IMG/VR virus record: IMGVR_UViG_3300042391_000634
Location: 62,001-126,000 of that record
DNA: 64,000 nucleotides
Direction: 5' to 3' (one strand)
Positions 3,642 to 33,006 of the stretch are shown here, one piece after another (position 1 is the first letter of the stretch; each line of letters starts with the position of its first letter). The notes under the pieces were generated by a model. It searched no databases and was not told the origin of the DNA. It worked only from the letters and a program-made list of their open reading frames with translations. The translations under genes and the position numbers were made by a program.

Positions 3642-3647
3642 AATGTG

Positions 3648-6639: not shown

Positions 6640-6687
6640 ATGTCTTTTCGTTTTTAATAAATACTTTTATTATTGTTATAAAAATGG

Positions 6688-6720: not shown

Positions 6721-6745
6721 TCATATCCAATTTATTAGAAATTAT

Positions 6746-7105: not shown

Positions 7106-7177
7106 AAAATTTCATTTATATTATAATATAATGATTTTCTTTTGTAATACAAAATATTTATATAAAAACATATAGAC

Positions 7178-7423: not shown

Positions 7424-7424
7424 T

Positions 7425-8086: not shown

Positions 8087-8454
8087 AGCAAACCGTCTTT
8101 CTTCTTCATTACTCGTTTTCCCTTTTTTGTTAGAAAAAACATCTCCTCGGTCGTATCATCTTCATATGATTCAACTAAACCCCTATCTTTTAGTTCATAT
8201 AATACACTACCGGCAACGATCTCACGTAAAACAACCTCAAATTCATCGTCATTAAATACACCGAGGAATTCATCGTCTTCGTTTTCCAATTCCCCTAAAA
8301 TAAACTTATCCGTTAGCTTATCTAAAAGGTATTTTTTAGCAAATTCGGTAGATTCAATCTCATAATCCTTAAAAAACTCAGTTTCAATTAAATCACTAAT
8401 AATGTCATTAGTCATCTCTATCACGATTGGTTGGTATATCTTACTCATTATCAT
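8083..8454 (-). CDS. Acidic hypothetical protein, possible winged-helix C-terminus
   Basis: LYELKDRGLVES...FFLTKKGK resembles a wHTH wing. Confidence 0.55.
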   Translation of the reverse strand: MIMSKIYQPIVIEMTNDIISDLIETEFFKDYEIESTEFAKKYLLDKLTDKFILGELENEDDEFLGVFNDDEFEVVLREIVAGSVLYELKDRGLVESYEDDTTEEMFFLTKKGKRVMKKKDGLL

Positions 8455-8560
8455 TAAATTGGTCTATTATAAATAATAATTAAAAAACGCCTAAAAAAGA
8501 AATTTTCATGACTTTTATTTTTCATTTTTTTTTATTATATTAATACAAAATCAATTATAC

Positions 8561-9814
8561 ATGAAAAAAGGAAAAATTTTTGTACAGATAGCATCCTACA
8601 GAGACCCCGAAATGATACCTACCATTGAGGACATGATTAAAAAGGCTAAAAATCCACAAAATTTAACATTTGGTATTTGCTGGCAATATGATAGTAGTGA
8701 ACCTATTACAATGTTTGACGGTATTGAACAATTTAGAGTTAGTAAACATCACTATGGTGAAAGTGAAGGTTTAGGATGGGCAAGACATATTACTAATACA
8801 TTATATGATGATGAAGAATATACATTACAAATTGATTCACATCACAGATTCGTTCAGGATTGGGATGTGATTGTTTTAGAAGATTTTAAACAAGCAAAAA
8901 AATTATCTAAAAAACCTATAATTTCAACATATTGCACACCGTTTAACCCAAAGGAAGATGAAAGTAAATGGAGTCCTACACCTTGTTTAATGTCTCAATA
9001 TGAATTTAGTGGAGATAGATTATTGATGAGTATGCCTTGGTATATTCAAGATTATAAAACAAGAACTAACGTTATTAAAGCAAGAACAATAAGTGGTCAC
9101 TTCTATTTCACTTATGGTAAATTCATTAAAGAAGTTCCGTATGATTCAGATATCTATTTTGGTGGTTACACTGAAGAAACGACATTGAGTGTTCGTGCGT
9201 TTACAAATGGTTATGATTTCTATAGTCCATATCGTATGGTTATGTGGCACGAATATACAAGAAACTACCGTGCCAAACATTGGGACGATCATGGTGTTAA
9301 TAGTGAAACAAAGAAAACAAGTGGCCAACGAGATGTTTACGCTCGTAATAAAACCCGTCAATTATTTGGTACAGAAAACTATGATATTGATATGGGGATA
9401 TATGGTTTAGGAACTGATAGGTCTTTACATGACTATGAAGTTTATGGAGGATTTGATTTTAAAAAATGTGTTATTCAAGATTACACATTGAAGGTTAAAG
9501 AACCACCAAATCCTTCTGATTGGGAAAATCAATTTATAACAAATAAATATGATTTAACGGTAGAATGGGATTTAGAATTCTTTAAGAAATTTGAATTTAC
9601 TAAACCTAAATTTTTAACTTTTGCAATTCACACATCTTCTGGAATAGAATTACATAGAAAAGATTTTACAGTTGAAGAAAATCCACAATATGTTAATTTA
9701 GAAAATAATAAAACTACAGTTAATTTAGAGTGTATTGAGAAACCCGGCAAGATTGTGATGTATTTATTTGATGAAGATAAACAATGGAGCGATAGGTATG
9801 AAAAAACAATCTAA
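8561..9814 (+). CDS. GlcNAc-transferase-like glycosyltransferase (GT60/Gnt1-like GlcNAc family)
   Basis: IFVQIASYRDPE, GLGWARH and LQIDSHHRFVQDWD (DxH), followed by EE..LSVRAFTNGYD. Confidence 0.8.
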   Translation: MKKGKIFVQIASYRDPEMIPTIEDMIKKAKNPQNLTFGICWQYDSSEPITMFDGIEQFRVSKHHYGESEGLGWARHITNTLYDDEEYTLQIDSHHRFVQDWDVIVLEDFKQAKKLSKKPIISTYCTPFNPKEDESKWSPTPCLMSQYEFSGDRLLMSMPWYIQDYKTRTNVIKARTISGHFYFTYGKFIKEVPYDSDIYFGGYTEETTLSVRAFTNGYDFYSPYRMVMWHEYTRNYRAKHWDDHGVNSETKKTSGQRDVYARNKTRQLFGTENYDIDMGIYGLGTDRSLHDYEVYGGFDFKKCVIQDYTLKVKEPPNPSDWENQFITNKYDLTVEWDLEFFKKFEFTKPKFLTFAIHTSSGIELHRKDFTVEENPQYVNLENNKTTVNLECIEKPGKIVMYLFDEDKQWSDRYEKTI

Positions 9815-10992
9815 TGAGAATAGCATTTATAGTAATTGGTAATAGTAGAAGAAGTAACTATCTTAATGGTCACAACTTAAGATATGGTAATGGTGGTGGT
9901 TCAGGAACCGATACAAGTTCAGTATTGGTTGCTGAATACCTTGCAAAACAAGGACACGAAGTTGTCTTTGTTGCAGATAAGTTAGAACCAAAATTAGAGG
10001 AAGAGTATAAAGCAAAAGGTAGAGTTTACATACCAGGGGAAGAATTCTACGGGGTAAAATATACCAACGACAATTTTGATGGAATCGATAACAAAGAGTT
10101 TGATATAGTGGTTAGTATGTTATGGTTCCAAGATTATGATAAATTACCAATTACAGTTACTAAAGGTTTAATTTATTGGTCACATATGCAATGGATTTAT
10201 GGTGTTGACCACATCAAAAATTATGTAAAAAATAATAATCTTTCATTGGGGTTTGTTCATATTTCAGAATGGGAAAAAAAGATGACAGGTGGGTTAACGG
10301 AATCGATTAAAAATAACGAAGTTAATACAAATGTTCAAATTTCATTAATTCCTAATCCTATTATGGATGAAATGATAAATGAAGTCGTTAGTTTAACCCC
10401 AACAAGAAAACCACATAAGTTTATATTTCATGCAGCTTGGGCTCGTGGGGGTAATGTTGCAATTGAAGCTGTTAGAAAATTAGATTATCCTGATACTGAA
10501 TTTCATGCATTTGATTATTTAATGGCAACACATAATCACCAAGATTCATTTTTTAATTTACATAATGGTGTTGATAAGAAAACACTTTTTACTAATATTG
10601 CGGAGAGTGAGTATTTTATTTATCCATTATATACACCATATCAGGATGTACATAAAGACACTTTTTCTTGTGTTGTGGCTGAAGCTATTGCGTTGGGTGC
10701 TATTGTTGTAACATACCCGTTAGGTGCTTTACCTGAAAATTTCGGTGAGTTTTGTCAATGGTTAGATTTTCCTGAAGGTGTAGATGTTGAAAAAATGCAA
10801 AACGAAGCATTAACAAAAGATTTAGAAGGTAAGTTTACTATAACTGATAATATTGTGGAGAAGATAAAATATTTAGAAGAAAATCCACAAATAAAAGAAG
10901 AGTTAAGGAAAAAAGGTAAGGAATCTATCAACTCACGATTTAATGTTAATACAGTCGGCCAAATGTGGACCGATTTAATTAATAAACTATAA
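9814..10992 (+). CDS. GT-B (GT4-like) glycosyltransferase
   Basis: GGSGTDTSSV...LAKQGHEV N-terminus and DTFSCVVAEAIALG...GALPE acceptor-side motif. Confidence 0.8.
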   Translation: MRIAFIVIGNSRRSNYLNGHNLRYGNGGGSGTDTSSVLVAEYLAKQGHEVVFVADKLEPKLEEEYKAKGRVYIPGEEFYGVKYTNDNFDGIDNKEFDIVVSMLWFQDYDKLPITVTKGLIYWSHMQWIYGVDHIKNYVKNNNLSLGFVHISEWEKKMTGGLTESIKNNEVNTNVQISLIPNPIMDEMINEVVSLTPTRKPHKFIFHAAWARGGNVAIEAVRKLDYPDTEFHAFDYLMATHNHQDSFFNLHNGVDKKTLFTNIAESEYFIYPLYTPYQDVHKDTFSCVVAEAIALGAIVVTYPLGALPENFGEFCQWLDFPEGVDVEKMQNEALTKDLEGKFTITDNIVEKIKYLEENPQIKEELRKKGKESINSRFNVNTVGQMWTDLINKL

Positions 10993-10993
10993 T

Positions 10994-11704
10994 ATGAAGG
11001 TACAGGATTTTTTTAAAGAATTGTTTTATATAAATTTAGATTCAAGAACAGATAGAAAAGAACAATTTGAAAGTGAAGTGAGTCAATATGAATTTAATAC
11101 TTTCATAAAAAGATCACCCGCTTGTATCCCAAAAATAGATGATGTTGGTGATGATTATGAATTATTAGGTTATAGAAAACATGGTGCTTGTGGAAGGTCA
11201 CATAAAAATTTAGTACAATATGCGAAAGATAAAAATCTTGAAAATATTTTCGTATTTGAAGATGACGCATCATTTTATAATGATGGTGACACAAGTGCAA
11301 TTGAAATAATTGAAAGTGCTTTGGATACGTTAAATACCATTCCCGATTGGGACTTATTTTATATGGGTGGTATTATTTTTGATGAGAATATAAACAAACC
11401 GTTTGGTAATTTATTAAAGGTAGATAAAATTTTAACAACACACGCTTGGGGAATAAATAAAAAATGTTATGATACTATTTTAAAATATAGACCTGGCGAT
11501 GGTTACACCGAACAATTTGATAGCCCAATTGATGGTAATATTGGTCTTAACACAAATTTAAATAAATTTTTAGCATATCCATTAGCGGTATACCAAAGAC
11601 CAAATATTTTATCAGATTGTGCAATTCGTAGTGATGGTGTTATTTTAAAATCTGACGATGTTAGTCCTTGGATTAGAAATTATAATAAAAATATTAGAAA
11701 ATGA
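10994..11704 (+). CDS. GT25 glycosyltransferase
   Basis: FYINLDSRTDRK, GACGRSH, IFVFEDDA and TTHAWGI motifs. Confidence 0.85.
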   Translation: MKVQDFFKELFYINLDSRTDRKEQFESEVSQYEFNTFIKRSPACIPKIDDVGDDYELLGYRKHGACGRSHKNLVQYAKDKNLENIFVFEDDASFYNDGDTSAIEIIESALDTLNTIPDWDLFYMGGIIFDENINKPFGNLLKVDKILTTHAWGINKKCYDTILKYRPGDGYTEQFDSPIDGNIGLNTNLNKFLAYPLAVYQRPNILSDCAIRSDGVILKSDDVSPWIRNYNKNIRK

Positions 11705-12483
11705 AATTAGGTTTATTTTATCAAACTGGATTTAGATATGTTGCGGCATATAATGCATTAAAACAATTTAGAAAATTTTATCCTGACTCACCTGTGGCAA
11801 TGTATGAAGATAATAGTTTTGTAATGGAACCAATATCTAAAAAATTTAACTGTTCATACAATAGAACAAATTTAAATGGATTTAACGATCCAAACAGTGG
11901 TAGACCAGCATTTAATATTACAACGATTCTTGGTTGGTTTGATAGAGTTTATGATGCTTGTACCACCACTTTAATTGATGTTGATTGGGTAATGAATTTT
12001 GAAGATGATGTTTGGTTTAAAAGAGAAATAAATAGAGAACCATTATATGATTTGTCAGGAATAGGTGGTGTAGGTTGGAATGAAAAATTATATTTATATT
12101 TGGGAACTGAAACAAGGTCAATATATGGATGTGGAGGATCTGTTTTTAATAGACTTAAATTTATTGAGGCTTATAAAAAAATAAAAGATATTAAATGGGA
12201 TGAGGTTGAATTAATAGAAAGGAGACCTCTTGAATGGACGGATAGTGCAATTACATTTTTATTTTTATTTTCTAAATTAAGTGTTGGTCAATGGGAAGAC
12301 GCTCAACAATACAGACACTCAAACATCCCACATATGGGGGATAGATTAGGTTGGCCGGGGACTATGGAGGATTTAGAAAATGAACAGGGGGACATTTCGG
12401 TTATACATTGTTGGAAACCATATTATTACCCAACAAAAGAAGAAATAGATTTAGTTGATTTAGATTTAGAAAAATATAAGTAA
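11701..12483 (+). CDS. Putative GT-A glycosyltransferase
   Basis: VMNFEDDVW DxD-like motif, and position inside the GT cluster. Confidence 0.55.
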   Translation: MKLGLFYQTGFRYVAAYNALKQFRKFYPDSPVAMYEDNSFVMEPISKKFNCSYNRTNLNGFNDPNSGRPAFNITTILGWFDRVYDACTTTLIDVDWVMNFEDDVWFKREINREPLYDLSGIGGVGWNEKLYLYLGTETRSIYGCGGSVFNRLKFIEAYKKIKDIKWDEVELIERRPLEWTDSAITFLFLFSKLSVGQWEDAQQYRHSNIPHMGDRLGWPGTMEDLENEQGDISVIHCWKPYYYPTKEEIDLVDLDLEKYK

Positions 12484-13307
12484 TGCAAAGTAATAATTAC
12501 ATAACAAGTAGATTACAGGGTAGGACTGGAAATATGATGTTTCAAATAGCACATGGGTTTGCTAAGTCATTAGAATATAATAGACAATTTATTGCTCCGT
12601 CACATGAATCTTCTAGTGGACATTTAGAAAAAACATTATTTAGAAAAATAGATTTTAATATAACGCATACACCTTCAGGTGATATATCTAAACATCTATT
12701 TTTACCGTTTCATTATAATGAAATAGAAGAACCATCATTTGATAAACCAACAGTATATGTTGGTTGGTTCCAAAGTGAAAAGTATTTTAAAAAATATACA
12801 GAAGTTATAAAAGATTTATTTTCACCCACATTAGAGTTTATTAATAGAGCTAAAGTAAATTTTCCGTTTTTAGGTAATAGTGTTGTTGGGGCAATAAATG
12901 TAAGGAGGGGAGATTATTTAACACAACCAACTAGACATCCTGTTGTTTCGATTGATTACATAAATGAGGCTTATAAACATTTACCTAAATGTGATTATAT
13001 TTTAGTTTTAAGTGATGATATACCATGGTGTAGAGAAAATATTAAAATAGAAAATGTAATATTTGTTGATAATTATTTAGATTGTGACGGACTATGGTTA
13101 TTATCACTTTGTAATCATTTTATAATAAGTAATTCATCGTTCTCATGGTGGGGAGCTTATTTATCAAATAGTGAAAATAAAAAAGTAATTTCACCAAGTA
13201 CGTGGGTAGGTCCCGATATTGTTGATAATATGGAAGATATTTGGTGTGATAATTGGGTTAAAATACCAACAAAATATAATGAAGGTAAAATAATATTAGA
13301 TATATGA
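12483..13307 (+). CDS. GT11 alpha-1,2-fucosyltransferase-like protein
   Basis: GRTGNMMFQ, INVRRGDY and IISNSSFSWWGAYL are GT11 motifs. Confidence 0.9.
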   Translation: MQSNNYITSRLQGRTGNMMFQIAHGFAKSLEYNRQFIAPSHESSSGHLEKTLFRKIDFNITHTPSGDISKHLFLPFHYNEIEEPSFDKPTVYVGWFQSEKYFKKYTEVIKDLFSPTLEFINRAKVNFPFLGNSVVGAINVRRGDYLTQPTRHPVVSIDYINEAYKHLPKCDYILVLSDDIPWCRENIKIENVIFVDNYLDCDGLWLLSLCNHFIISNSSFSWWGAYLSNSENKKVISPSTWVGPDIVDNMEDIWCDNWVKIPTKYNEGKIILDI

Positions 13308-13858
13308 TAAATGAAAGAGGTTATTGGTTAGAAAAGAACAGTCATGAACACAAATATGATTTACCTCTGAACCAAGAATTAATAAAAATTTTAAAAGAAA
13401 TAAATTGTAAGTCAATCGTTGATTTGGGGTGTGGCCCTGGTTTATACACTAAATCTTTTATTGTAAGTAATTTTGATTGTGAATGTTATGATGGTAATCC
13501 ACATACTCCGAATGAAACGGATAATTTATGTTCAATATTAGATTTATCTGAACCGTTTGATTTAAATAAAAAATTTGATTGTGTATTATCTTTAGAAGTT
13601 GGAGAACATATCCCAAAAGAATATCAAGATATTTTTATTGAAAATTTATTAAGACATTCAAATGGATTAATTATTTTATCGTGGGCCACTATCGGTCAGG
13701 GGGGACATGGTCATGTAAATGAACAACCAAATGATTATATTGAAGGTTTATTAACACCTCACAATTATAAAAGAAATACAGAATATGAAAGTAGATTGAG
13801 GAATAGTGCTCAGTGGTGGTGGTTTAAAAATACCGTTATGGTGTTCCAAAAATATTAA
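13304..13858 (+). CDS. Class I SAM-dependent methyltransferase
   Basis: IVDLGCGPG motif I and FDCVLSLEVGEHI. Confidence 0.88.
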   Translation: MINERGYWLEKNSHEHKYDLPLNQELIKILKEINCKSIVDLGCGPGLYTKSFIVSNFDCECYDGNPHTPNETDNLCSILDLSEPFDLNKKFDCVLSLEVGEHIPKEYQDIFIENLLRHSNGLIILSWATIGQGGHGHVNEQPNDYIEGLLTPHNYKRNTEYESRLRNSAQWWWFKNTVMVFQKY

Positions 13859-13860
13859 AT

Positions 13861-14946
13861 ATGTACGATTACTTAATAGTTGGTGCAGGATTCTACGGAT
13901 CCATTTGTGCACATGAATTAACAAAAAAAGGTTATAAGGTTTGTGTTATTGATAATAGAAACCATATCGGAGGCAATTGCCACACTGAGAACAAAGACGG
14001 TATTAATATACATACTTATGGACCTCACGTATTTCACACATCTAATGAAGAAGTATGGAAATGGATAAATCAATTTGTTGAATTTAATAACTTTACATTA
14101 AGAATTGTTGCAAATTATAAAGGTGAGATTTATGCGTTACCATTTAATATGTGGACATTTAACAAGTTATGGAACGTCGTTACACCTAAAGAAGTGGAAG
14201 ATATAATTAAATCTCAATCAATAGGTATTGATGAACCATCTAATTTAGAAGAACAAGCAATTAAATTGGTTGGTTCGGATATCTATGAAAAATTAATTAA
14301 ACATTACACAGCTAAGCAGTGGAGAAAAGACCCAAAAGAATTACCAAAAGAGATTATCACAAGATTACCAGTTCGTTTAACATACGATAACAATTATTTT
14401 AATGACAAATATCAAGGTATTCCAATTGGTGGATACACACAAATATTTGAAAAATTATTAGATGGTATTGAAGTTAAATTAGGGGTTGATTATTTTAAAG
14501 ATGAATTACCAGAACATAATAAAGTAATTTATACTGGACCAATTGATAAATATTTTAATTACAAGTATGGTGAGTTAGAATATAAAACTACAAGATTTGA
14601 ACATTATATTTTTGGTACGGATAATTATCAAGGTTGTGCCGTTATGAATTATACGGATAGTGAAACAACGCATACGAGAACTATAGAACATAAACATTTT
14701 GAACCTGACGTTAAAACCGAATTAACGTGGGTAACATGGGAATACCCAACACAATATAAAGCAGGAGAAACAGAACCGTATTATCCTGTAAATGACAAAG
14801 AGAATACTGAAATGTATTTGAAATACAAAGAAGAGTCTAATAAGTTAGAGAACATACATTTTGGTGGGAGATTGGCCGAATACAAATATTATGATATGCA
14901 CCAAGTGATATCATCAGCATTAAATTATATAAAGAGTTTTACCTAA
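13861..14946 (+). CDS. glf: UDP-galactopyranose mutase
   Basis: YLIVGAGFYG, HIGGNC, HTYGPHVFH, EPYYP and GRLAEYKYYDMHQ. Confidence 0.97.
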   Translation: MYDYLIVGAGFYGSICAHELTKKGYKVCVIDNRNHIGGNCHTENKDGINIHTYGPHVFHTSNEEVWKWINQFVEFNNFTLRIVANYKGEIYALPFNMWTFNKLWNVVTPKEVEDIIKSQSIGIDEPSNLEEQAIKLVGSDIYEKLIKHYTAKQWRKDPKELPKEIITRLPVRLTYDNNYFNDKYQGIPIGGYTQIFEKLLDGIEVKLGVDYFKDELPEHNKVIYTGPIDKYFNYKYGELEYKTTRFEHYIFGTDNYQGCAVMNYTDSETTHTRTIEHKHFEPDVKTELTWVTWEYPTQYKAGETEPYYPVNDKENTEMYLKYKEESNKLENIHFGGRLAEYKYYDMHQVISSALNYIKSFT

Positions 14947-23581: not shown

Positions 23582-24239
23582 ATGGGTTTTTATTTATTCT
23601 ACCTAATTTCCATCCTGTTGGTATTATCCCCATCATTTTTATTTTTTTATTTTTAATACCATTATTAATCCATTGAGAACCATATTGTGAATTTGATTCG
23701 CCAATACCTTGTCCTTTTTTTGATGATTTTATTTTCTCAATTGTTTCAGGTTTATGTTTTTTACCTTCCCAAGAATAATATTCTTGTATTGGTTTCATTT
23801 CACCCATTTGATATCTTTTTTTATTTGATTCAGATATTTGTGTAGAACGTTTTTTTCGATATTCTTCATCTGTTTTTAATCTTTCACTATGTTTTAACCC
23901 AGCAGCTTGGGAACATTTAAATTGATGTTTTTGATTGTTAAACCCACCTGAACCACCAGGTTTCATATTATAACAATTAACATCGTAAACATATTCTTCG
24001 GTGACAATTTCCTTTTCTCTTTGAATTAAAATTTCTCTATTTTTACACCATTCAATTATTTCAATTTTAAAATTTTCTTCACCATATTTTCTAATCGCAT
24101 ATCTTAAACTTTTACCACTACCTAAATAACCATCTTTTAAATTACTTGTTGAATGCATACCAATATAAAACTTATTGTTAAGTAAATTGGTTGTTTTATA
24201 AATGAAGTGGTATTTTTTTAACTTAATTGAGTTCGACAT
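23574..24239 (-). mobile_element. Free-standing GIY-YIG homing endonuclease (Seg-like) with NUMOD3-like repeats
   Basis: FIYKTTNLLNNKFYIG...YLGSG...E...YN and WEGKKHKPETIEKI. Lies immediately downstream of the tmRNA. Confidence 0.9.
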
Positions 24240-24262
24240 ACTAATAAATATGTCGAAAACTC
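24229..24262 (-). promoter_or_regulatory. Hairpin sequestering the endonuclease start codon, with a late-like promoter in its arm/loop
   Basis: Minus strand GAG-TT-TTCGACATA tttattag TATGTCGAA-CTC. ATG is in the 3' arm and TATTTATT overlaps the loop. Confidence 0.6.
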
Positions 24263-24274
24263 AAAAAAGTCGAG

Positions 24275-24679
24275 GGTGGAGACGAGGGGAGTCGAACCCC
24301 TGTCCGATCCGCCGTACCATAAATGGACTACACGTTTATTCAATTAGTTCACAATTGACAAATATTTGGTTCCTATTTTGACATCGTAACCAATAACTGT
24401 GTCGAGTTCACTTTAAGGTAGCCCTCTGAACGAGACCTTTGACACATTTTAAGTGGTATCATCACTGTGGGGACTTCTGTTCCTAGGTTATATGTCCTTC
24501 GACCCGAGTGTAGTTTCGCCTTAGGCTACTGCTACAGTAGAAGTTGCGATTAAACCGCAAGCTTCCATGTTTGTATAAACGTTGTCGTTTAAATTTTACC
24601 ACCATAGATTTAAGTCATAGATGACATCTGACTACGTGCCCATTTACCATACCAACGCCCGTCAATTCCAGGCGTCCCC
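24275..24679 (-). ncRNA. ssrA: tmRNA
   Basis: 5' GGGGACGCCTGGAATTGAC pairs with 3' GGTTCGACTCCCCTCGTCTCCACC, including the G3.U70 alanine identity pair. Internal tag ORF AAC GAC AAC...GTA GCC TAA at 24589-24521. Confidence 0.95.
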
Positions 24680-24688
24680 ATTTATAAT

Positions 24689-24720
24689 CAAATATAGATA
24701 AAAAAGGGTTAAAAAACTAA
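24689..24720 (-). promoter_or_regulatory. Bacteroidota-type promoter for the tmRNA
   Basis: TTAG-N20-TATATTTG, 9 nt upstream of the mature 5' end. Confidence 0.6.
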
Positions 24721-24755
24721 TTTTAACCCTGAATAACATATATGTTAGAAAAAAA

Positions 24756-24953
24756 TTACTTAGTAGTAGTTTTCTTAGCTTTTGGAGCTTTGTCAGTTAC
24801 TTTTTTAACTTTAGCTTTAACTTCAGCCACTTTCTCTTTAACAACTGCAACTTCAGCAACAACCTCAGTTTCTAATTGTTGTAATTCAACCGCTTTTTCA
24901 GCCATTGTTCCAGCACCTAAAATTTTCTTAATTAAATCAATAATTTTTTTCAT
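24756..24953 (-). CDS. 65-aa protein with a Lys/Ala-rich basic tail
   Basis: ...VKAKVKKVTDKAPKAKKTTTK. TATTTATA 14 nt upstream. Confidence 0.7.
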   Translation of the reverse strand: MKKIIDLIKKILGAGTMAEKAVELQQLETEVVAEVAVVKEKVAEVKAKVKKVTDKAPKAKKTTTK

Positions 24954-24996
24954 AAATTTTCTTTTTATATAAATATATCAAAAAACGACTAAATTG

Positions 24997-25677
24997 TCAA
25001 GAGGTCAATGGGAGAGATTTTTCATATAACGCCTCAAAAAACAACTTGTTCTTTTCCCATTTTTTATTGGTCATACCTACAGATTTATGGGTAACCCCAA
25101 ATCTTGTTGTTAAACCAATCTTAACCCCATCCAAAAAGTTTTCAACACAGAAGGAAATATCGTAGAAATGAAACCCTTCAAACTGTTCGTTAAATTCCTT
25201 CTTTATACGTCCTTTATGAACCGCAAAGAATAAACCATCCACTATTACCACATCCTTAAGAACGTCGTTAAATACCCCCTTAGAATAGTGATTTACATGT
25301 CTTTTACCCTCATGAAGATGACCAACCACACCAAACATATTCTCACGGTTTTGCCACCACATTCCACTTGTTAATTTATCGGTTCCAGCAATACCGATAA
25401 TTCCATATTCAGGATGTTTATCAAATAACTTAACAATCTTTGGTGTCATGTTTGGTGTTTCCAAAATAAGGTCATCATGCATGAAAACAATGATGTCATT
25501 AACACTTTCTTTTAACCCTTTGTTATAGACTTGTGTTAATGACATTTCACCGTCATTTTCATAAACAAGTATTTCTGTTTTGGGATGTGAAAACATACGT
25601 TCAACATGTTTAACATATTCATCATCAATTTTTCTTGTGGATATCACCACACTTATTGGTTCATTATTCTTCGACAT
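24997..25677 (-). CDS. GT2-like glycosyltransferase
   Basis: YNKGLKESVNDIIVFMHDDL and FHFYDISFC. Start set at MSKNN. Confidence 0.8.
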   Translation of the reverse strand: MSKNNEPISVVISTRKIDDEYVKHVERMFSHPKTEILVYENDGEMSLTQVYNKGLKESVNDIIVFMHDDLILETPNMTPKIVKLFDKHPEYGIIGIAGTDKLTSGMWWQNRENMFGVVGHLHEGKRHVNHYSKGVFNDVLKDVVIVDGLFFAVHKGRIKKEFNEQFEGFHFYDISFCVENFLDGVKIGLTTRFGVTHKSVGMTNKKWEKNKLFFEALYEKSLPLTS

Positions 25678-26413
25678 AAAGTACTTGTATTTTACCGTTG
25701 ATTTCAATTAAGTCAACAACGATCGGTTTATTAATTGGTCTATAATTGGCTGTACATATTGAGGCATTTACAAATAAAGTTTTTTTACCATATTCAATAC
25801 CGTAACCTTCATGAATATGACCAAATACGTTTACCAATGGATTAATTAAACCAATTCTATTTATCAAACATTCACATCCAACATTTGTATTTGGTTGTCT
25901 CCAATTGTTTACTAAATCTCTATACCCGTTTGGTGGACCGTGTGTAATTAACACATCGGTGTCTTCAGGAATCATATTCCATTTTTCCTGTAATTCAATT
26001 CCTAATCTTGGTAAATTAAATGCCCAATCGTAAAATTCTGGTTGCCAAGGACTACCGTAAAATTTAATAGGTCTTGAGAACTCAGGAGTTTCAATTGTTA
26101 TAAAACTATCTTCTAAATAAGTCACATCGGACTGTGATAAATTCTCAGGGGACATTAAATGATGTAACCAATCGTAATCACCTTTATGATGTGGTTGATT
26201 AACCTTTTCAAAACAAAAATCATGATTACCTGATATAAATATTTTTTCGTCCCATCCACCTAAGTTTTGGAACCAATGAATAAAATCAGTAACGTCTTTT
26301 TCGCCACCTTTGTTTGAGATGTCGCCTGCATGAATTAACACATCACCTTTTGGTAAAGGATGTTCCATCTGATGATGAAGGCTGTGGGTGTCGGATATTA
26401 ATACTAATCTCAT
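25664..26413 (-). CDS. Metallophosphoesterase (calcineurin-like, MPPED2-type)
   Basis: ISDTH, HAGD, SGNHD, ITHGPP and FGHIHE. Start at MRLVL, directly after TATATTTG. Confidence 0.92.
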   Translation of the reverse strand: MRLVLISDTHSLHHQMEHPLPKGDVLIHAGDISNKGGEKDVTDFIHWFQNLGGWDEKIFISGNHDFCFEKVNQPHHKGDYDWLHHLMSPENLSQSDVTYLEDSFITIETPEFSRPIKFYGSPWQPEFYDWAFNLPRLGIELQEKWNMIPEDTDVLITHGPPNGYRDLVNNWRQPNTNVGCECLINRIGLINPLVNVFGHIHEGYGIEYGKKTLFVNASICTANYRPINKPIVVDLIEINGKIQVLYVEE

Positions 26414-26447
26414 AAAACAAATATACAAATTATTTTCGAATATGCAT

Positions 26448-26474
26448 AAAAAAAGTCAGAATTTCTTCTGACTT
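26448..26474 (-). terminator. Terminator closing the large ncRNA
   Basis: Minus strand AAGTCAGA-agaaat-TCTGACTT followed by a T-run. Confidence 0.8.
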
Positions 26475-27400
26475 AATAGGGCCTTAGGTTTTCATAGAGA
26501 ACAAGGTCATTTACCACCACTTTGTTTTTCTAAACAAAGAAAATAAAACTCTGAGAATACAAGTTTTAACAACCGACTTAGGAACATTATTTGTTTCTTT
26601 CCTTTTCCACGAACTTTTGATTCGTACCGATCAATGACGGTCAATTAGATTAACCAATCCTAAAGTCATCAGATACTCTTTTATTACTTATTACTCAACA
26701 AATCTGCCGACCTGTTTCAACCTTGCGGGTTTAGAGAACTTTCTTAAAAATCATATTGGGATTGAGTCCCTTTATGGCCGTGAACCTCTCACGACTAAGT
26801 AGTCACCTGTCTCCAATGACTGACGAACACTTTTTCAGTTTAATTATGATTTTTATATCGTAATAAAAATTTAGTTTCCGAATTAGGAAAGTAGTGGTTC
26901 GTCACCTAGCCAAGTTATCTTTTGAACAACTCGATACTAAACTACTCTCTGAAGTGTCCCCACCTCCATATTTTTGGTTTCCTTCGAAATTAAACCCTTG
27001 GTAGGATTTAGTCAAGGACACTAACAGCACCACCTGTTTTTTGTCATACCTTCCATCTTACGACGCTACGGTTTTAAGACCACCATTGTATTGAATCACG
27101 CAATTGTATAATCGGATAACTATACTTCTCACAAACTAATTCTATGGATTATTCTTATTGGTGTTCCCACCTCAACCAAACAACTCGGATTGCTTGGTCA
27201 TCTAACCATTTCGCTACGGAGTTACCCTCACTACTTCAGGTCAAATGATATTCCACTTGTCTACTCGAGATCCATTACTGAATCCGCAACTTACCCCAAC
27301 CAAGGGTTTGTCACTTTATCCCACTTTCATGGTTTATTTTATTGACTATAGACGGCCAATATTTTTATTCAAAGAACTTTATCTTTTGGGTTATTCACCC
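26448..27400 (-). ncRNA. Large (~900-950 nt) structured non-coding RNA, GOLLD-like candidate
   Basis: No credible ORF, GC above flanks, many hairpins (AACC-CGCAA-GGTT, GGGA-CTCAA-TCCC, GAGTTGTTC-AAAA-GATAACTT), own promoter and terminator, next to tRNAs. Family identity rests on size, context and recollection only. Confidence 0.65.
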
Positions 27401-27440
27401 TTCTTTTACAAAGATAAGAAATGTTTTCTAATATTCCAAA
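27368..27440 (-). promoter_or_regulatory. Bacteroidota promoter plus boxA-like antiterminator
   Basis: TTTG(27440-37)-N20-TATCTTTG(27416-09), then AGTTCTTTGAA at 27378-68. Confidence 0.75.
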
Positions 27441-27656
27441 TTATTTAGAAACTTTTTTAGATTTTTTTTCTTTTTTAATTTCATATGATCCACCCATGTC
27501 ATGACCAACTTCCACATTCTCTTTTGGAGATGGGGATGCTACACCTCTCCACTCTGATTTTGTTGTGTATTTCCATGTTGTACCAGCCATTTGATAAGCT
27601 TGTTTTTCGTCAACTCTGATGATATTTCCAGTTTTAGTATTTTTTAAACACTTCAT
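27441..27656 (-). CDS. Hypothetical protein
   Basis: 71-aa ORF MKCLKNTKTGNIIRV with TTTG-N19-TATATTAT upstream. Confidence 0.75.
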   Translation of the reverse strand: MKCLKNTKTGNIIRVDEKQAYQMAGTTWKYTTKSEWRGVASPSPKENVEVGHDMGGSYEIKKEKKSKKVSK

Positions 27657-27704
27657 ATTTTTTGTTTTTAATAATATAGGAAATTTTTGTTAAAAAACAA
27701 AATA

Positions 27705-27817
27705 ATCAATAGGAACAGTTCCTTCACTTCTGTCTTGTATCTCCGTAGCAGTCAGCACTATTGATATTTGATGGATGAAAAACATCTATTCTTCTTGCGG
27801 ACTTCCATCGGAGTCCC
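27705..27817 (-). ncRNA. Candidate structured intergenic RNA
   Basis: ATCAATAG/CTATTGAT (27705-12/27758-65) and GGACT/AGTCC stems in a GC-enriched gap. Confidence 0.35.
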
Positions 27818-27822
27818 ATATC

Positions 27823-28050
27823 TTACAAAAACTTATTTCGGTTTATTCTTGTCTCTTCAGCCTCTTTATACCAACGAATCCAAGTTAATGAAACATCAAC
27901 GGGGGCAAGTATCCAAGCCATTACTAAAACCATGATAGTATCTAATTCTGGTGAACCACCTGTTGGGTCGTTAGAATATCTTTTGTCTAAATTTTTAAAC
28001 AATTGATACAAACAATAAATAACACAAATAACATAATAACCTATAAACAT
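27823..28050 (-). CDS. Small two-TM membrane protein
   Basis: Two hydrophobic stretches separated by a DPTGGSPE linker. Confidence 0.7.
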   Translation of the reverse strand: MFIGYYVICVIYCLYQLFKNLDKRYSNDPTGGSPELDTIMVLVMAWILAPVDVSLTWIRWYKEAEETRINRNKFL

Positions 28051-28063
28051 AACTTTTAATTTT

Positions 28064-28414
28064 TTATTTCCAAAATAACGATATAATAATAATTGTGAAA
28101 GCCAACAGTAATTGAACTGATGTTTTCATTGTGAACAGTTGACCAAAATGATATGGATATAAAAATGATGCAATAAAAATACCTGTTACAAAAAATATAA
28201 ATCTATTACTCCACATTTCACCATTAAACGCCTTTACACCATAATGAGATGCTTTAATCCACAAGAATGTACATCCAACAGCAATTAAATAGGGCCACGG
28301 GGTCTTAATCCAATTTTCCATTTTAAATTGCCAATACATTATATACCAATGACCAACTGATCCTAATAGGAAAAGTGATATTGATGTAAGCAAATTAAAA
28401 ATTTGTGGTTTCAT
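28064..28414 (-). CDS. Four-TM small membrane protein (SMR/DMT-like size)
   Basis: 116 aa from MKPQIF with four hydrophobic helices. The upstream ORF extension overlaps tRNA-Glu and was discarded. Confidence 0.7.
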   Translation of the reverse strand: MKPQIFNLLTSISLFLLGSVGHWYIMYWQFKMENWIKTPWPYLIAVGCTFLWIKASHYGVKAFNGEMWSNRFIFFVTGIFIASFLYPYHFGQLFTMKTSVQLLLAFTIIIISLFWK

Positions 28415-28452
28415 GATAATAATATACGAAAAATATTCCAATAAACAAAATG

Positions 28453-28524
28453 TATTCTCGACGGGATTCGAACCCGTATTACCTCCGTGAAAGGGAGGTG
28501 ACCTAACCCTTAGTCGACAAGAAC
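28453..28524 (-). tRNA. tRNA-Glu(TTC)
   Basis: Cloverleaf; CCTCC-CT TTC AC-GGAGG anticodon arm; GGTTCGAATCC T arm; CCA not encoded. Confidence 0.93.
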
Positions 28525-28766
28525 AAATAATCACTCAAATGGGTATTTGTTATAATATCACAATTGTTGCGCTATACTCTGGTTAATTACTCCGTCTGTA
28601 TCCAACAGCTTTATGTTGGCTTATAATTGGCTACTTTATTATAACTCACATTTTTATTTGTGATTAAAAATCCTCGTCTTTCCGAGGTGCCAAACAACCT
28701 TAGTCTCAATCTACTCTTCCGATTGTTAATCGTGTAGTGGATCCTCCCCATTAGACTTTTGGTTCG

Positions 28767-28853
28767 CGGAAGCGCAGGGATTCAAACCCCGGTTACAGTT
28801 TCCCGTAAAGCAGTTTTCAAGACTGCCGCATTCGATCGCTCTGCCACGCTTCC
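28767..28853 (-). tRNA. tRNA-Ser(TGA)
   Basis: GGAAGCG/CGCTTCC acceptor, GCAGT-CT TGA AA-ACTGC, long variable arm, T loop TTTGAAT. Confidence 0.92.
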
Positions 28854-28856
28854 ATT

Positions 28857-29045
28857 GACACCTTTATTTATCCAACTCACAGGTGTCTTAGCTGTCCCCT
28901 TTCGGGTTAGGAATAGACCATTGGGTTACTATATTTACCCCTTATAGTAGACGGTCAATCTAAATAGAACCTTGTCCTATCATCAGTTCCATATGGTCGT
29001 CAAACCACTTCTCTTCATATTGGACATACTATTCGGTGACTAACC
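28857..29045 (-). ncRNA. Candidate structured RNA between tRNA-CAT and tRNA-Ser
   Basis: GGTTAG/CTAACC and GAATAG/CTATTC close a ~140-nt multibranch; extra CCC-GAAA-GGG and GACACCT/AGGTGTC hairpins. Confidence 0.45.
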
Positions 29046-29053
29046 GAACCGTG

Positions 29054-29126
29054 TGGACCCGGAGGGGTATGATCCCCCGACCTCGACATTATGAGTGTCT
29101 TGCTCTACCAGCTGAGCTACAAGTCC
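29054..29126 (-). tRNA. tRNA with CAT anticodon (Ile2 or elongator Met)
   Basis: GGACTTG/CGGGTCC acceptor (G1-C72, so not initiator), GACA-CT CAT AA-TGTC, atypical T loop ATCATAC. Confidence 0.88.
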
Positions 29127-29129
29127 TAT

Positions 29130-29516
29130 TAGTCTTTTCCTTACCTCTTAATAATCACATTGCCATCCCGGTGTTACTGCCGGGTGCTTACCACTTGCGT
29201 GGAGTGATTATCACATTAATGTTTGATTCCAATCCAACTTAAATTGCACCATCCGATTCATTGATCTGGTTGACAAAGTCCTCGATTGGATTAGTCTCAA
29301 AAAGTTACAGGTTTTTTGTACCATCTATGTACATCATGACCGAAGTTTGGTTGGATTTACATCACGTCTCAGCAAACTTTACTCGGTGGTTACATTTTCG
29401 TATTGGGGTAATTATTCCCGACTTATAGTAACTCTACCCTCACCGCCCTACCTCGCGAGTCAGACGGATCTTTTGGGATTCATAGACAGTGGGGTTACAC
29501 CACCGTCGTCACCTGT
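29130..29516 (-). ncRNA. Candidate ~385-nt structured RNA between tRNA-Thr and tRNA-CAT
   Basis: ACAGGT/ACCTGT closes a 210-nt domain with GACGGTGG/CCACTGTC and AAGTTTG/CAAACTT stems. A 3' three-way junction has ATAATCAC/GTGATTAT, CCAC-GCAA-GTGG and CCCGG/CCGGG. Confidence 0.55.
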
Positions 29517-29518
29517 TG

Positions 29519-29590
29519 AGCCTCCACTCGGAATCGAACCAAGTTATCATGATTACAAGTCATGTGCATCGCCATCAATGCTTTAGAGGC
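29519..29590 (-). tRNA. tRNA-Thr(TGT)
   Basis: GCCTCTA/TGGAGGC acceptor, CATGA-CT TGT AA-TCATG, GGTTCGATTCC. Confidence 0.93.
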
Positions 29591-29606
29591 TTATTTTATA
29601 TCAATA

Positions 29607-29659
29607 TGTCAAAGAACCACTTATTTCACAAAGATAATTAATAAATTCGGATATACAAA
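29607..29659 (-). promoter_or_regulatory. Bacteroidota promoter plus boxA-like element heading the tRNA operon
   Basis: TTTG(29659-56)-N19-TATCTTTG(29636-29), then GGTTCTTTGACA at 29618-07. Confidence 0.75.
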
Positions 29660-29678
29660 ATTATTTTTAATCTTTTAC

Positions 29679-29708
29679 AAAAAACCCTCACTTTTTAGGG
29701 TGAGGGTT
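29679..29708 (-). terminator. Terminator after the PhyH gene
   Basis: AACCCTCAC/GTGAGGGTT stem with a T-run on the minus strand. Confidence 0.8.
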
Positions 29709-29728
29709 ACTAATATACCAATATATCA

Positions 29729-30511
29729 CTATTCTCCCCAATGTTTATCTCTAAGTTCATAGATATCAATTGGTTCACGTTTCATATGACTTCCTTGATT
29801 GTAAAAAGCACCTTTTTTCAAGAAACCACCTAAAAAGTTTCTTCTCATTCTGTTTGAGTTGTTAGCTTCCGACCCGTGTACACAATGTGAGTGTAATAAA
29901 ACCACTTGTCCTTTTTTTAGGATTCCTTCTATTTTACGGAAATCATGTCCTTCAGGCATGATACAAGGTTTACCTCTTTCATTTCTCCAAAAAGATGGGT
30001 TAGTTTTTGCTCTTTCTTCGTCAATCTCAATAGGTAACGTTTGTAATCTATGTGAACCCTCGTAGTTCCAAACTGACCCATTACCGTCGTCGTGATTGTC
30101 TAACGCTAATGCTGTATTAATAATTTCATTGTGTTTACAACCCGTGTAAAAGGCGTTTTGGTGCATATCTCTACCTAATTGTCCCGGTGGTTTAAAGTAT
30201 GCCCAACTTTGCATCCCAACAATTTCACCTTCCATTAAAAACTGACAAGCCTCAATTAATTTAGGATGAACATATAGTTTTGCAAGTTTATCGGATAATT
30301 TATGTGGATATGCAAATGGATCCCATTCACCCCACTCCTTACCATCGTCTGTTAACGTTCCTTTTCTCTCCTGACGTAAACGTTCAAGTTCGTCATTGAT
30401 TTCATCACATTCTTCTTCGGTTAAGAGTTCTAATGCTGTAAATCCTCGGTATCTCCAATCAAATGTCATTTGTTGAATTTCCAATTCTGTGAGATGTTTA
30501 AAATTTCCCAT
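29729..30511 (-). CDS. PhyH-family 2-oxoglutarate/Fe(II) dioxygenase
   Basis: YFKPPG...MHQN, ALALD...NG, GQVVLLHSHCVHGS..N.SNRMRR. Confidence 0.85.
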   Translation of the reverse strand: MGNFKHLTELEIQQMTFDWRYRGFTALELLTEEECDEINDELERLRQERKGTLTDDGKEWGEWDPFAYPHKLSDKLAKLYVHPKLIEACQFLMEGEIVGMQSWAYFKPPGQLGRDMHQNAFYTGCKHNEIINTALALDNHDDGNGSVWNYEGSHRLQTLPIEIDEERAKTNPSFWRNERGKPCIMPEGHDFRKIEGILKKGQVVLLHSHCVHGSEANNSNRMRRNFLGGFLKKGAFYNQGSHMKREPIDIYELRDKHWGE

Positions 30512-31356: not shown

Positions 31357-33006
31357 ATGAAAAAACTATTAACGCTACTTGGAATACTAGTAATATCCAT
31401 AGCAACAAATGCACAATTAACGGTTAATCAATCAGTAACACCAACAACAGGATTAAAGGTTGGTGATACAGTTTCGGTAAAATACACAGTTGCAAGAGGT
31501 ACAACCACACCTCGTTATTTTTGGTTAAGATATCAATTTAACAATAAGGCACTTGCATATGTTTCAACAACGTTCTCACAAGGAACGTCGGTTCAAACAT
31601 TCTACACAGGTTGGTCGTCTTATAAGTTTACCTCAAGTGCCGCAAATAGTATTACAGCTAAAGATTTATATTCACAATATCTAATATCTCCATGGGGTTA
31701 TGCAACTAATGCAGATTGGAATGTTGGTCAATTAACAGTTCAAAGAACAGACGCTTCAATCAATGGAGATGTTGCAACTCAAAAATATGTAATTAAAGAT
31801 TTGGGAGCATATACCGACATCCACAAATTAGACTTATCATATTCAATTGACGCAACAAGTGCATACATTACACCAATTACGACTGACCCAGGTACAATGT
31901 CTTTAACAAATGTCGTGGGTAATACGTCTCAGTTCAAACTAAGAGTTTTATTCCCAACAGGATATGATATTACATCACATACGGTTGCTTTATTCCCAAT
32001 AAAAACAGATGGAACAATTGATTTTAATGTAACCCCTATTGCAACTAAAGTATTGGATGCAAGTGGTGAGGCGACATTTACAACAGAAGTTAAAGTGGGT
32101 GATAGTTTGGCGGTGTGGATGTATGGAGCAACAGGAAAAACTTTTATGAATAACATTATAACAGTATCGGATGCATATAAAGCATTTTTAGGTATTTCAC
32201 AAACGGATATTGCGGGTGTAAAAACTTATTTTACAAGACCACAATTACAAAAAAATATAGGACAAATTACAAAGAGTAAAGGTGTATTTAGTGAAAGTGA
32301 TTCATATTATATGTTTGCTTATGTAATGGGTATTGCTAATGTAAAAGATAGTGCATGGATTCCATTGAGTACAAATAGTGGTTTATTCAAATGGTATAGT
32401 GGTTTATTAAATCAAAGTTGGTTAGATGGTATACCTACTTACAAAACAAAAGTAACATCATCAAATCAATCGGTAGATATGGTATACGCATGGGGTGGTG
32501 ATTTGGATTGGTCTCATTCATCTGACCCCGATGTAATTGCATCTAGAATTGCCGCAGGAACTTACGCAAATTCAATTAATCCAAACGAACAAACTATAAA
32601 AACATTTTCAGTTCAATCAATGGCATACACACCTGTAATTGAAAAGGCAACATTAGGATTAGTTTCAACAATTTCTAACGGTAAAGTTGTTTTAACAGGA
32701 ACATTAACAAAAGACGGATTGGCGGGTTTAGAGGTAATCTTACAATATGACAATTCAAAATTAACATTTGAAAATATATCATTTGACGCTGGTCCAAATG
32801 TAACTAACTTCTCAACAAACGGAGATGGTAGATTAACATTCGGTTCTATGGATCAAATGAAAACAGGTAGAATTAAAATAGGAACACCTTACAAATTAAC
32901 TTTTACACCAAAAGAAACCATAACAAATACTGCAGGTTTATTCTATACAGTTTTAGCTGACGCGGTTGATGGAAACGGAAACAAGATTAATTTGATTGTT
33001 GAATAA
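31357..33006 (+). CDS. Secreted beta-rich protein with a dockerin-like segment and C-terminal cohesin-like domain
   Basis: Signal peptide ATNA-Q. ITVSDAYKAF and W.GDLDWSHS match paralog 33010. LAGLEVILQYDNSKLTF is a cohesin-like strand pattern. Confidence 0.55.
   Translation: MKKLLTLLGILVISIATNAQLTVNQSVTPTTGLKVGDTVSVKYTVARGTTTPRYFWLRYQFNNKALAYVSTTFSQGTSVQTFYTGWSSYKFTSSAANSITAKDLYSQYLISPWGYATNADWNVGQLTVQRTDASINGDVATQKYVIKDLGAYTDIHKLDLSYSIDATSAYITPITTDPGTMSLTNVVGNTSQFKLRVLFPTGYDITSHTVALFPIKTDGTIDFNVTPIATKVLDASGEATFTTEVKVGDSLAVWMYGATGKTFMNNIITVSDAYKAFLGISQTDIAGVKTYFTRPQLQKNIGQITKSKGVFSESDSYYMFAYVMGIANVKDSAWIPLSTNSGLFKWYSGLLNQSWLDGIPTYKTKVTSSNQSVDMVYAWGGDLDWSHSSDPDVIASRIAAGTYANSINPNEQTIKTFSVQSMAYTPVIEKATLGLVSTISNGKVVLTGTLTKDGLAGLEVILQYDNSKLTFENISFDAGPNVTNFSTNGDGRLTFGSMDQMKTGRIKIGTPYKLTFTPKETITNTAGLFYTVLADAVDGNGNKINLIVE

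What the first reader, a model, noticed from the sequence alone, without database searches (positions are those of the whole stretch)
26448..27400. ~900-nt ORF-free structured RNA with its own promoter, boxA and terminator
Seen: a complete transcription unit (TTTG-N20-TATCTTTG, boxA-like, terminator at 26448-74) with no credible ORF, raised GC and many minus-strand hairpins. Established: GOLLD (~800 nt) and ROOL RNAs occur near tRNAs in phages, and their function is unknown. Inference: a GOLLD-like or new giant ncRNA expressed early from a host-sigma promoter.
Basis: partly seen in the sequence, partly recalled or inferred. Interest (0 to 1): 0.75.

Follow-up and report, generated by a model that had tools for sequence, protein, structure and literature searches.

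The report
Phage GOLLD RNA with rrn-type leader
The ORF-free stretch is a full-length GOLLD RNA, a known giant phage RNA that builds RNA-only cages, in a 336-kb freshwater jumbo phage. It is abundant in lake metatranscriptomes, and its leader carries the same boxA signal as the presumed host phylum's ribosomal RNA operons, which no paper I could search reports.

Summary

**Identity.** Rfam RF02032 matches window 26548-26949 (minus strand) over the whole model at 290 bits (cut-off 150). The 400 nt upstream are homologous to the 5' cap domain of GOLLD env-38, whose 14-mer nanocage was solved by cryo-EM.

**Conservation.** 32 distinct homologues from virus contigs define a conserved core at 27357-26548 (810 nt). 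It has 190 covarying base pairs, about 98% canonical.

**Expression.** Four lake and freshwater metatranscriptomes pile contig depth of 170-13,900 on 26561-27348. Depth on the neighbouring ORFs is about zero.

**Transcription unit.**
- A Bacteroidota-type promoter: TTTG-N20-TATCTTTG at 27440-27409.
- A small leader hairpin.
- A boxA, AGTTCTTTGAATAA, at 27378-27365.
- The core.
- An intrinsic terminator at 26474-26448.

**The boxA.**
- It is present upstream of all 33 GOLLDs of this subfamily, counting GCTC and GATC variants.
- It is upstream of 13 of 14 GOLLDs with a different 5' half.
- It is upstream of the phage's own tRNA array.
- It is upstream of 16 of 19 Bacteroidota 16S genes.
- It is absent from one Brevundimonas phage GOLLD.

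The RNA is a new member of a known kind. Its biological function remains unknown. The rrn-like leader is the only new element.

The parts
27437..27440 (-). -33 element TTTG of a Bacteroidota-type promoter
   Evidence: Sequence and regex. The same promoter architecture lies upstream of most homologues.
27409..27416 (-). -7 element TATCTTTG (consensus TAnnTTTG), 20 nt after the -33 element. The inferred start is near 27404.
   Evidence: The motif pair occurs 34 times in the genome against 15.8 +/- 4.5 simulated. The start site is inferred, not mapped.
27388..27400 (-). Small leader hairpin GGGT-GAATA-ACCC, directly upstream of boxA. This is the rrn-leader order: hairpin, then boxA.
   Evidence: Sequence. 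Close relatives keep it with changes such as GGGC/GCCC (L050). The rrn-leader layout is described in PMC13753749.
27365..27378 (-). boxA element AGTTCTTTGAATAA, followed by ATATTG
   Evidence: It is present upstream of all 33 subfamily members (31 as G[TC]TCTTT[GA]A; L024 reads GATCTTTGAAAA) and of 13 of 14 other GOLLDs. The same motif lies upstream of 16 of 19 Bacteroidota 16S genes. Background is 0.04-0.10 per kb per strand.
26950..27357 (-). GOLLD 5' domain (env-38-type cap domain)
   Evidence: nhmmer finds homologues in 43 virus loci. 97 conserved pairs are 97.7% canonical, 65 with compensatory pair types. Three env-38 blocks match uniquely and in order.
26548..26949 (-). GOLLD 3' domain (Rfam RF02032, model positions 1-416)
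   Evidence: 290.1 bits against a gathering score of 150, E 7e-82. 93 conserved pairs, 79 with compensatory types.
26832..26892 (-). A/U-rich variable linker inside the 3' domain. It corresponds to the disordered, inward-pointing linker of env-38 and holds no tRNA here.
   Evidence: It is poorly aligned and variable in A2 and in the Rfam alignment. It is closed by a covarying helix, 26903-26893 with 26831-26822. The role of the linker is described in PMC12286853.
26520..26539 (-). 8-bp A/U-rich hairpin in the 3' trailer, conserved only in close relatives
   Evidence: Sequence and alignment A2. Metatranscriptome depth is already low here.
26448..26474 (-). Intrinsic terminator: 9-bp stem, GAAA loop, T run
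   Evidence: The same terminator lies 69-73 nt after the core in 10 of the 11 closest homologues (counting the window). The 11th locus is cut off 27 nt after the core.

Best explanation
The region encodes a full-length GOLLD RNA: core 27357-26548, 810 nt, minus strand. It sits in a complete 335.6-kb freshwater jumbo phage whose promoters point to a Bacteroidota host.

**Shown here**
- Family membership of both domains.
- A conserved, covarying secondary structure.
- High abundance of this RNA, or close relatives, in lake metatranscriptomes, with silent flanks.

**Inferred: how it is made**
- Host RNA polymerase starts at a Bacteroidota sigma-A type promoter near 27404.
- The nascent leader displays a hairpin and then a boxA identical to the one in Bacteroidota 16S leaders.
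- This boxA recruits host NusB-S10 and, through them, the Nus antitermination complex.
- The 0.8-kb untranslated, highly structured RNA is then transcribed processively and escapes Rho, as rRNA is.
- Transcription ends at the terminator at 26474-26448. The trailer, and probably the leader, are trimmed.

**Inferred from homology with env-38**
- The RNA assembles by itself into a closed homo-oligomeric nanocage.
- The 5' domains form the caps, the 3' domains form the ring, and the A/U-rich linker points inward.

**What the cage does is unknown.** My preferred guess is a role in phage takeover of translation, such as handling tRNAs or ribosomes. The reasons are that it is always embedded in or next to phage tRNA and tmRNA genes and is expressed like a stable RNA.
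For: **Identity**
- Rfam GOLLD scores 290.1 bits over the full model. Homologues score 257-298 bits.
- The 5' domain matches published env-38 blocks uniquely and in order.

**Structure**
- Of 192 predicted pairs, 142 have compensatory changes.
- About 98% of cells are canonical, against 35-42% in slid controls.

**Expression**
- Contig depth is 169-13,931 over 26561-27348 in four metatranscriptomes.
- It is 0-95 in the flanking bins and about 0 over the ORFs at 24985-26363.

**Promoter and boxA**
- Both are conserved across homologues.
- The pair occurs only twice in the whole genome: here and ahead of the tRNA array.
- The same boxA lies in 16 of 19 Bacteroidota 16S leaders.
- One X17 RNA contig covers the boxA, reaching 27380, and continues upstream.

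**Literature**
- The cage structure and unknown function are from PMC12286853.
- The role of boxA in loading NusB-S10 and blocking Rho is from PMC13753749.
Against: - No strand-specific reads or mapped RNA ends. Only assembled contigs were available, and their depth sums close relatives.
- The host is inferred from promoter and boxA type only.
- Binding of Nus factors to this boxA is untested. The complex prediction was not run by the tool.
- One GOLLD from a Brevundimonas phage has no boxA-like motif, so boxA is not needed by every GOLLD.
- Oligomer state varies among GOLLDs. The literature reports 10-mer and 14-mer forms, so it cannot be read off the sequence.
- The biological function is a guess.
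Confidence: 0.9

Rival explanations
1. It is a new class of giant non-coding RNA that only resembles GOLLD superficially.
For: Rfam models only the 3' half. The 5' halves of another GOLLD group (L122-L139) are barely alignable to this one.
Against: The Rfam match covers the whole model at nearly twice the gathering score. The 5' half shares long collinear blocks with GOLLD env-38. Core length of 810 nt against 833 nt, and the tRNA context, also fit.
Confidence: 0.02
2. The GTTCTTTGAA motif is not a Nus-factor boxA. It is instead part of a promoter, an RNase processing site, or a piece of the GOLLD fold.
For: - TTCTTTG resembles the TTTG-containing Bacteroidota promoter elements.
- Leaders appear to be trimmed from most RNA contigs.
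- No binding data exist.
Against: - Its distance to the core varies from 10 to about 130 nt, with unrelated inserts between, so it is not part of the fold.
- It lies downstream of a separate complete promoter in most loci.
- The identical motif sits 80-350 nt upstream of 16S genes across Bacteroidota, where boxA is expected.
- It matches the experimentally bound B. subtilis boxA consensus AUGAUCUUUGAAA.
Confidence: 0.2
3. The RNA-library signal comes from contaminating phage DNA or from unrelated organisms. GOLLD is then not a discrete abundant transcript.
For: Only contigs, not reads, were laid. Depths sum all contigs at least 90% alike, and strand is unknown.
Against: DNA would cover the neighbouring ORFs equally. 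Instead their depth is about 0, against hundreds to thousands on GOLLD, in all four runs from four studies. The other stable RNAs, tmRNA and tRNAs, also stand out.
Confidence: 0.05
4. The stretch hides a small protein gene, and the RNA is an mRNA.
For: ORFs of 43-67 aa exist on both strands.
Against: Substitutions among homologues follow base-pair compensation, not codon positions. Indels are not in multiples of three. No ORF is kept across the family.
Confidence: 0.01

Closest known systems
GOLLD RNA env-38 (marine metagenome; cryo-EM 14-mer D7 nanocage, PMC12286853)
   Same: Both domains are homologous. Size is similar (810 against 833 nt). The RNA starts at the same GGCCG...TAT.GTC motif. 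It has an A/U-rich internal linker and sits in a phage-like context next to tRNAs, with tRNA-Met upstream in many relatives.
   Different: It comes from a freshwater jumbo phage. The sequence is diverged, at 2-3 mismatches per roughly 20-nt conserved block. The oligomer number is not known. The leader, with promoter and boxA, was not part of the studied construct.
Rfam RF02032 GOLLD (3' domain model)
   Same: The match covers the whole model at 290 bits, with all helices kept.
   Different: The model does not cover the 5' domain or the leader. A covarying helix that closes the linker (26903-26893 with 26831-26822) is not in the structure line shown.
rRNA operon leaders (hairpin, then boxA; Nus-factor antitermination complex)
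   Same: The leader has the same order of elements and the same boxA sequence as Bacteroidota 16S leaders. In both cases the downstream product is a long untranslated structured RNA.
   Different: It is phage-encoded and precedes GOLLD, and separately the phage tRNA array, rather than rRNA. No boxC-like or RNase III stem was identified. Function is untested.
ROOL RNA
   Same: It is a large phage-associated RNA near tRNAs that forms an RNA-only cage.
   Different: It is unrelated in sequence and fold, and there is no ROOL match in the window.

Membership tests
GOLLD RNA (RF02032) | Conserved 3' domain matching the Rfam covariance model above its gathering score | tested here: met
   290.1 bits against 150, E 7e-82, model positions 1-416 of 416.
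GOLLD RNA (RF02032) | A large structured 5' domain upstream, giving a total length of about 800 nt or more | tested here: met
   The core is 810 nt. The 5' domain has 97 covarying pairs and is homologous to env-38.
GOLLD RNA (RF02032) | Phage or prophage context, usually beside tRNA genes | tested here: met
   The record is a complete 335,630-bp virus. Four tRNAs lie 1.1-2.2 kb upstream and a tmRNA 1.9 kb downstream. Relatives have tRNAs directly flanking the RNA.
GOLLD RNA (RF02032) | Variable A/U-rich linker (J13/15) inside the 3' domain | tested here: met
   The variable, poorly aligned A/U-rich stretch at 26892-26832 corresponds to the unstructured model region.
GOLLD RNA (RF02032) | Self-assembly into a homo-oligomeric nanocage | not testable with these tools
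   This is known for env-38 (14-mer) and S. agalactiae GOLLD. Here it is inferred from homology only.
GOLLD RNA (RF02032) | Expressed as a discrete RNA | tested here: met
   Contig depth in four metatranscriptomes is confined to 26561-27348, with silent flanks. Strand and exact ends were not determined.
Nus-factor (rrn-type) antitermination site | boxA sequence matching that of the host's rrn leaders, located in the transcribed leader | tested here: met
   AGTTCTTTGAATAA lies 31 nt after the -7 box. The motif is in 16 of 19 Bacteroidota 16S leaders, and an RNA contig covers it. The exact host is unknown.
Nus-factor (rrn-type) antitermination site | Binding of NusB-S10, and Rho or terminator read-through that depends on boxA | not testable with these tools
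   Complex prediction did not fold this kind of complex. It needs biochemistry or a reporter assay.

The most novel reading that the evidence does not exclude
GOLLD genes of Bacteroidota-type and many other freshwater phages are built as miniature rRNA-style operons.

- A conserved boxA in the leader hijacks the host NusB-S10/NusG antitermination complex.
- That complex protects the long untranslated transcript from Rho.
- It may also act as a co-transcriptional chaperone for folding and cage assembly.

This link between GOLLD and the rrn transcription machinery is not in any paper I could search. It would give the first handle on how these cages are produced in infected cells.
Probability: 0.55. 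Interest if true: 0.55.

Novelty: new member of a known kind. Interest (0 to 1): 0.4.

Why it matters
GOLLD is one of the largest and most elaborate bacterial or phage RNAs. Its cage structure was solved only in 2025, and its function is still unknown. This locus adds four things:

- a complete transcription unit in a complete jumbo-phage genome;
- a set of 32 full-length relatives that share the env-38-type 5' domain, which Rfam does not model;
- evidence that this RNA is among the most abundant phage transcripts in lake metatranscriptomes;
- a conserved rrn-type boxA leader, shared with the phage's tRNA operon.

The boxA leader suggests that GOLLD is made by the host's stable-RNA transcription machinery. 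That is a testable clue to its biogenesis. It is also a practical hint for expressing GOLLD in cells.

Tried and rejected
**Dead ends**
- Complex prediction with NusB, S10 and the boxA RNA. Two Bacteroidota Swiss-Prot references were not held. The B. subtilis job was accepted but not folded, so it gives no evidence either way.
- The genome-contig scan with the 5'-domain 16-mer gave 62 loci. Only one, a 5.9-kb contig binned as Saccharibacteria (L070), holds a GOLLD. No host chromosome or prophage was found.
- The Prolixibacteraceae contig of nearly the same length as the phage (L105) is bacterial and carries a 16S gene. The similar length is a coincidence.
- blastn against GenBank phages found only one relative, the 634.8-kb uncultured phage LR745206.
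- Weinberg 2009 (PMC4140389) is not held. I could not check directly whether it mentions a boxA.
- A covariance model of the 5' domain was not built, because the model length would exceed the calibration limit.
- The count of structure pairs was not used, because it would need a typed 1125-character structure. A script did the equivalent count.

**Checked and rejected**
- A second exact GTTCTTTGAA at 31739-31748 lies inside an ORF on the other strand and is a chance match.
- Leader inserts in L037, L045 and L018 have no Rfam match.

Full report
**What is in the sequence.** On the minus strand between 27440 and 26448 there is no ORF longer than 67 aa on either strand. GC is 0.36-0.40 against a genome mean of 0.31.
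- TTTG (27440-27437), N20, TATCTTTG (27416-27409);
- a small hairpin, GGGT/ACCC, at 27400-27388;
- GTTCTTTGAA at 27377-27368;
- a terminator stem at 26474-26453 followed by a T run to 26448.

The 810-nt core folds to -211.3 kcal/mol, with z = -3.4 against dinucleotide shuffles.

**Identity.** A scan of the whole window against Rfam gives one strong non-tRNA match: GOLLD (RF02032) at 26548-26949, minus strand. It scores 290.1 bits against a gathering score of 150, E 7e-82, over model positions 1-416 of 416. It is the only copy in the genome, which is a 335,630-bp virus record rated complete.

Rfam models only the 3' half of GOLLD. For the 5' half I took a conserved 16-mer from a blastn match to the 634.8-kb uncultured phage LR745206 and scanned the virus contig collection with it. 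nhmmer with the whole unit then found 43 loci with homologues, 32 of them distinct and full length. Distant members align from 27357 to 26548 and no further. That defines an 810-nt core; across the family the range is 798-868 nt.

The published sequence of GOLLD env-38, the RNA whose 14-mer cage was solved by cryo-EM, is printed in a supplement of PMC12286853. Three of its 5'-domain blocks match the window once each and in the same order: 27330-27312, 27266-27246 and 27160-27138. Each has 2-3 mismatches and a chance expectation of 0. env-38 also begins at the same GGCCG motif as the core defined here. So both domains are those of canonical GOLLD. The 'new giant RNA' alternative is excluded.

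**Structure.** RNAalifold on the 33-sequence alignment predicts 192 pairs, 142 of them with at least one compensatory double change. My own count on distinct rows gives:

| Domain | Pairs | Canonical cells | Pairs with compensatory types | Slid controls: canonical | Slid controls: compensatory pairs |
|---|---|---|---|---|---|
| 5' | 97 | 97.7% | 65 | 35-40% | 14-27 |
| 3' | 93 | 97.8% | 79 | 37-42% | 18-38 |

The structure was derived from the same alignment, which inflates the contrast somewhat, but the margin is large.

**Expression.** The stretch is held by many lake and freshwater metagenomes and by six metatranscriptomes. I laid the assembled contigs of four metatranscriptomes, from four studies, on window 24000-29900 at 90% likeness or better:
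- 26561-27348: word depth 169-13,931.
- The two flanking bins: 0-95.
- ORFs at 24985-26363: about 0.
- ORFs at 27546-28333: 0-10.
- tmRNA (24197-24787): 13-540.
- Highest tRNA bin: 119.

DNA contamination would cover the ORFs as well, so this is RNA. Several contigs stop matching at 27357, the core boundary, and continue with a different leader. One X17 contig covers the boxA, reaching 27380, and continues 255 nt upstream with unlike sequence. That shows the boxA is transcribed in at least one relative.

These are contigs, not reads. They carry no strand information and no exact ends, and their depths sum close relatives.

**The leader.** All 33 subfamily members carry (A/C)GTTCTTT(G/A)AA, usually followed by (A/T)TATTG, 10 to about 130 nt upstream of the core; L021 reads GCTC and L024 reads GATC in place of GTTC. 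Most have a TTTG-N19-21-TAnnTTTG promoter 20-90 nt further upstream. In others a tRNA lies just upstream.

A second GOLLD group was retrieved with a 3'-domain pattern. Its 5' halves barely align to this one. It has the same motif just upstream of the RNA in 13 of 14 distinct loci, there downstream of TTGACA-type promoters. The background frequency of the motif is 0.04-0.10 per kb per strand, so a 150-nt leader would carry it by chance about once in a hundred cases.

In the whole 335.6-kb genome, a promoter followed within 120 nt by this motif occurs exactly twice. One is the GOLLD unit. The other is the leader of the tRNA array (29659-29609, GGTTCTTTGACATATTG, then tRNA-Thr).

In genomes sampled across Bacteroidota, 16 of 19 16S genes have GTTC(T/A)TTGA within 400 nt upstream, for example AAGTTCTTTGAACATATTGG. 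The motif also fits the boxA consensus that B. subtilis NusB was shown to bind, AUGAUCUUUGAAA. The order of a hairpin and then boxA is that of rrn leaders (PMC13753749).

It is not universal: the GOLLD of Brevundimonas phage Bajun has none. No paper in the searchable library links GOLLD with boxA or Nus factors. I could not read Weinberg 2009.

**Host and context.** The Bacteroidota promoter pair occurs 34 times in the genome, against 15.8 +/- 4.5 in simulations. Together with the boxA type and the freshwater origin of all holders, this points to a freshwater Bacteroidota host. That is an inference.

Neighbouring genes encode a metallophosphoesterase, a family-2 glycosyltransferase and a PhyH-like dioxygenase. 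The phage's only tRNAs (Thr, Met, Ser, Glu) and its tmRNA all lie within 3 kb of GOLLD on the same strand.

In the eleven closest homologues, counting the window, the same terminator follows the core after 69-73 nt in ten; the eleventh locus is cut off 27 nt after the core. In more distant relatives, tRNAs begin 7-60 nt after the core, and tRNA-Met is often upstream, as for env-38.

**How it most likely works.**
- *Shown:* it is GOLLD, it is structured, and it is abundant as RNA.
- *Inferred from comparative data and established knowledge of rrn antitermination:* host RNA polymerase starts near 27404. The nascent boxA loads NusB-S10 and the Nus complex. The long untranslated RNA is then made processively and shielded from Rho, and ends at the terminator. 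The leader and trailer are trimmed.
- *Inferred from homology with env-38:* the RNA self-assembles into a closed cage, with the 5' domains as caps, the 3' domains as the ring, and the A/U-rich linker (26892-26832) inside.
- *Unknown:* the biological role. Its constant association with phage tRNA and tmRNA genes, its stable-RNA style of expression, and the reported ribosome pull-down (cited) make a role in translation takeover my preferred guess, at low confidence.

**Verdict.** This is a new member of a known RNA family, so the novelty of the finding as stated is low. The conserved rrn-type leader and the metatranscriptome abundance are useful additions that I could not find reported.

Noticed in passing
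window 29602-29659 (-): The leader of the tRNA array (Thr, Met, Ser, Glu) has the same architecture as the GOLLD leader: TTTG-N19-TATCTTTG, then GGTTCTTTGACATATTG, 12 nt before tRNA-Thr. These two are the only promoter-plus-boxA units in the 335.6-kb genome.
   Followed up: yes
window 24275-24679 (-): A phage-encoded tmRNA (Rfam 91 bits) has the unusual predicted tag ATSTVAVA*. It reaches depth 13-540 in the four metatranscriptomes. A tmRNA also lies near GOLLD in L045 and, on the opposite strand, next to the GOLLD of Brevundimonas phage Bajun.
   Followed up: partly
window 28525-28765, 28854-29052, 29127-29517 (-): The spacers between the four tRNAs are 200-390 nt long and GC-rich (0.41-0.45 against 0.31), with no Rfam match at E up to 1. 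RNA contigs partly cover them. Three runs replace 29338-29387 with the same or nearly the same 16 nt. These could be unrecognised structured RNAs or decayed tRNAs.
   Followed up: partly
window 26893-26903 with 26822-26831 (-): A strongly covarying 10-bp helix closes the A/U-rich linker; for example, one pair reads GC in 19 sequences and AU in 13. It is not in the structure line of the Rfam model shown. It may be a known pseudoknot or linker-closing stem of GOLLD.
   Followed up: partly
L037:~790-930, L018:~6380-6500, L045/L008 leaders: Some relatives carry a 60-90-nt insert between the promoter and boxA. In L037 and L018 it contains a hairpin with compensatory changes (AGC...GCT against AGTAA...TTACT). 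It has no Rfam match. It may be an optional leader module.
   Followed up: partly
window 24972-25000 (-): A near-perfect sigma-70-type promoter (TTGACA-17-TATATT with an extended TG) lies upstream of the 65-aa ORF at 24756-24953. That is odd in a phage whose other promoters look Bacteroidota-type.
   Followed up: no
L122-L139 (virus contigs): A second GOLLD group shares the 3' domain (73-96 bits by nhmmer) but has a different 5' half. It sits behind TTGACA-N17-TAnnnT promoters and the same boxA. This suggests different hosts but the same leader logic.
   Followed up: partly
window 28064-28534 (-): The listed 156-aa ORF overlaps tRNA-Glu (28452-28524). The real gene probably starts at the internal Met (MKPQIF...) and encodes a small membrane-like protein.
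   Followed up: no
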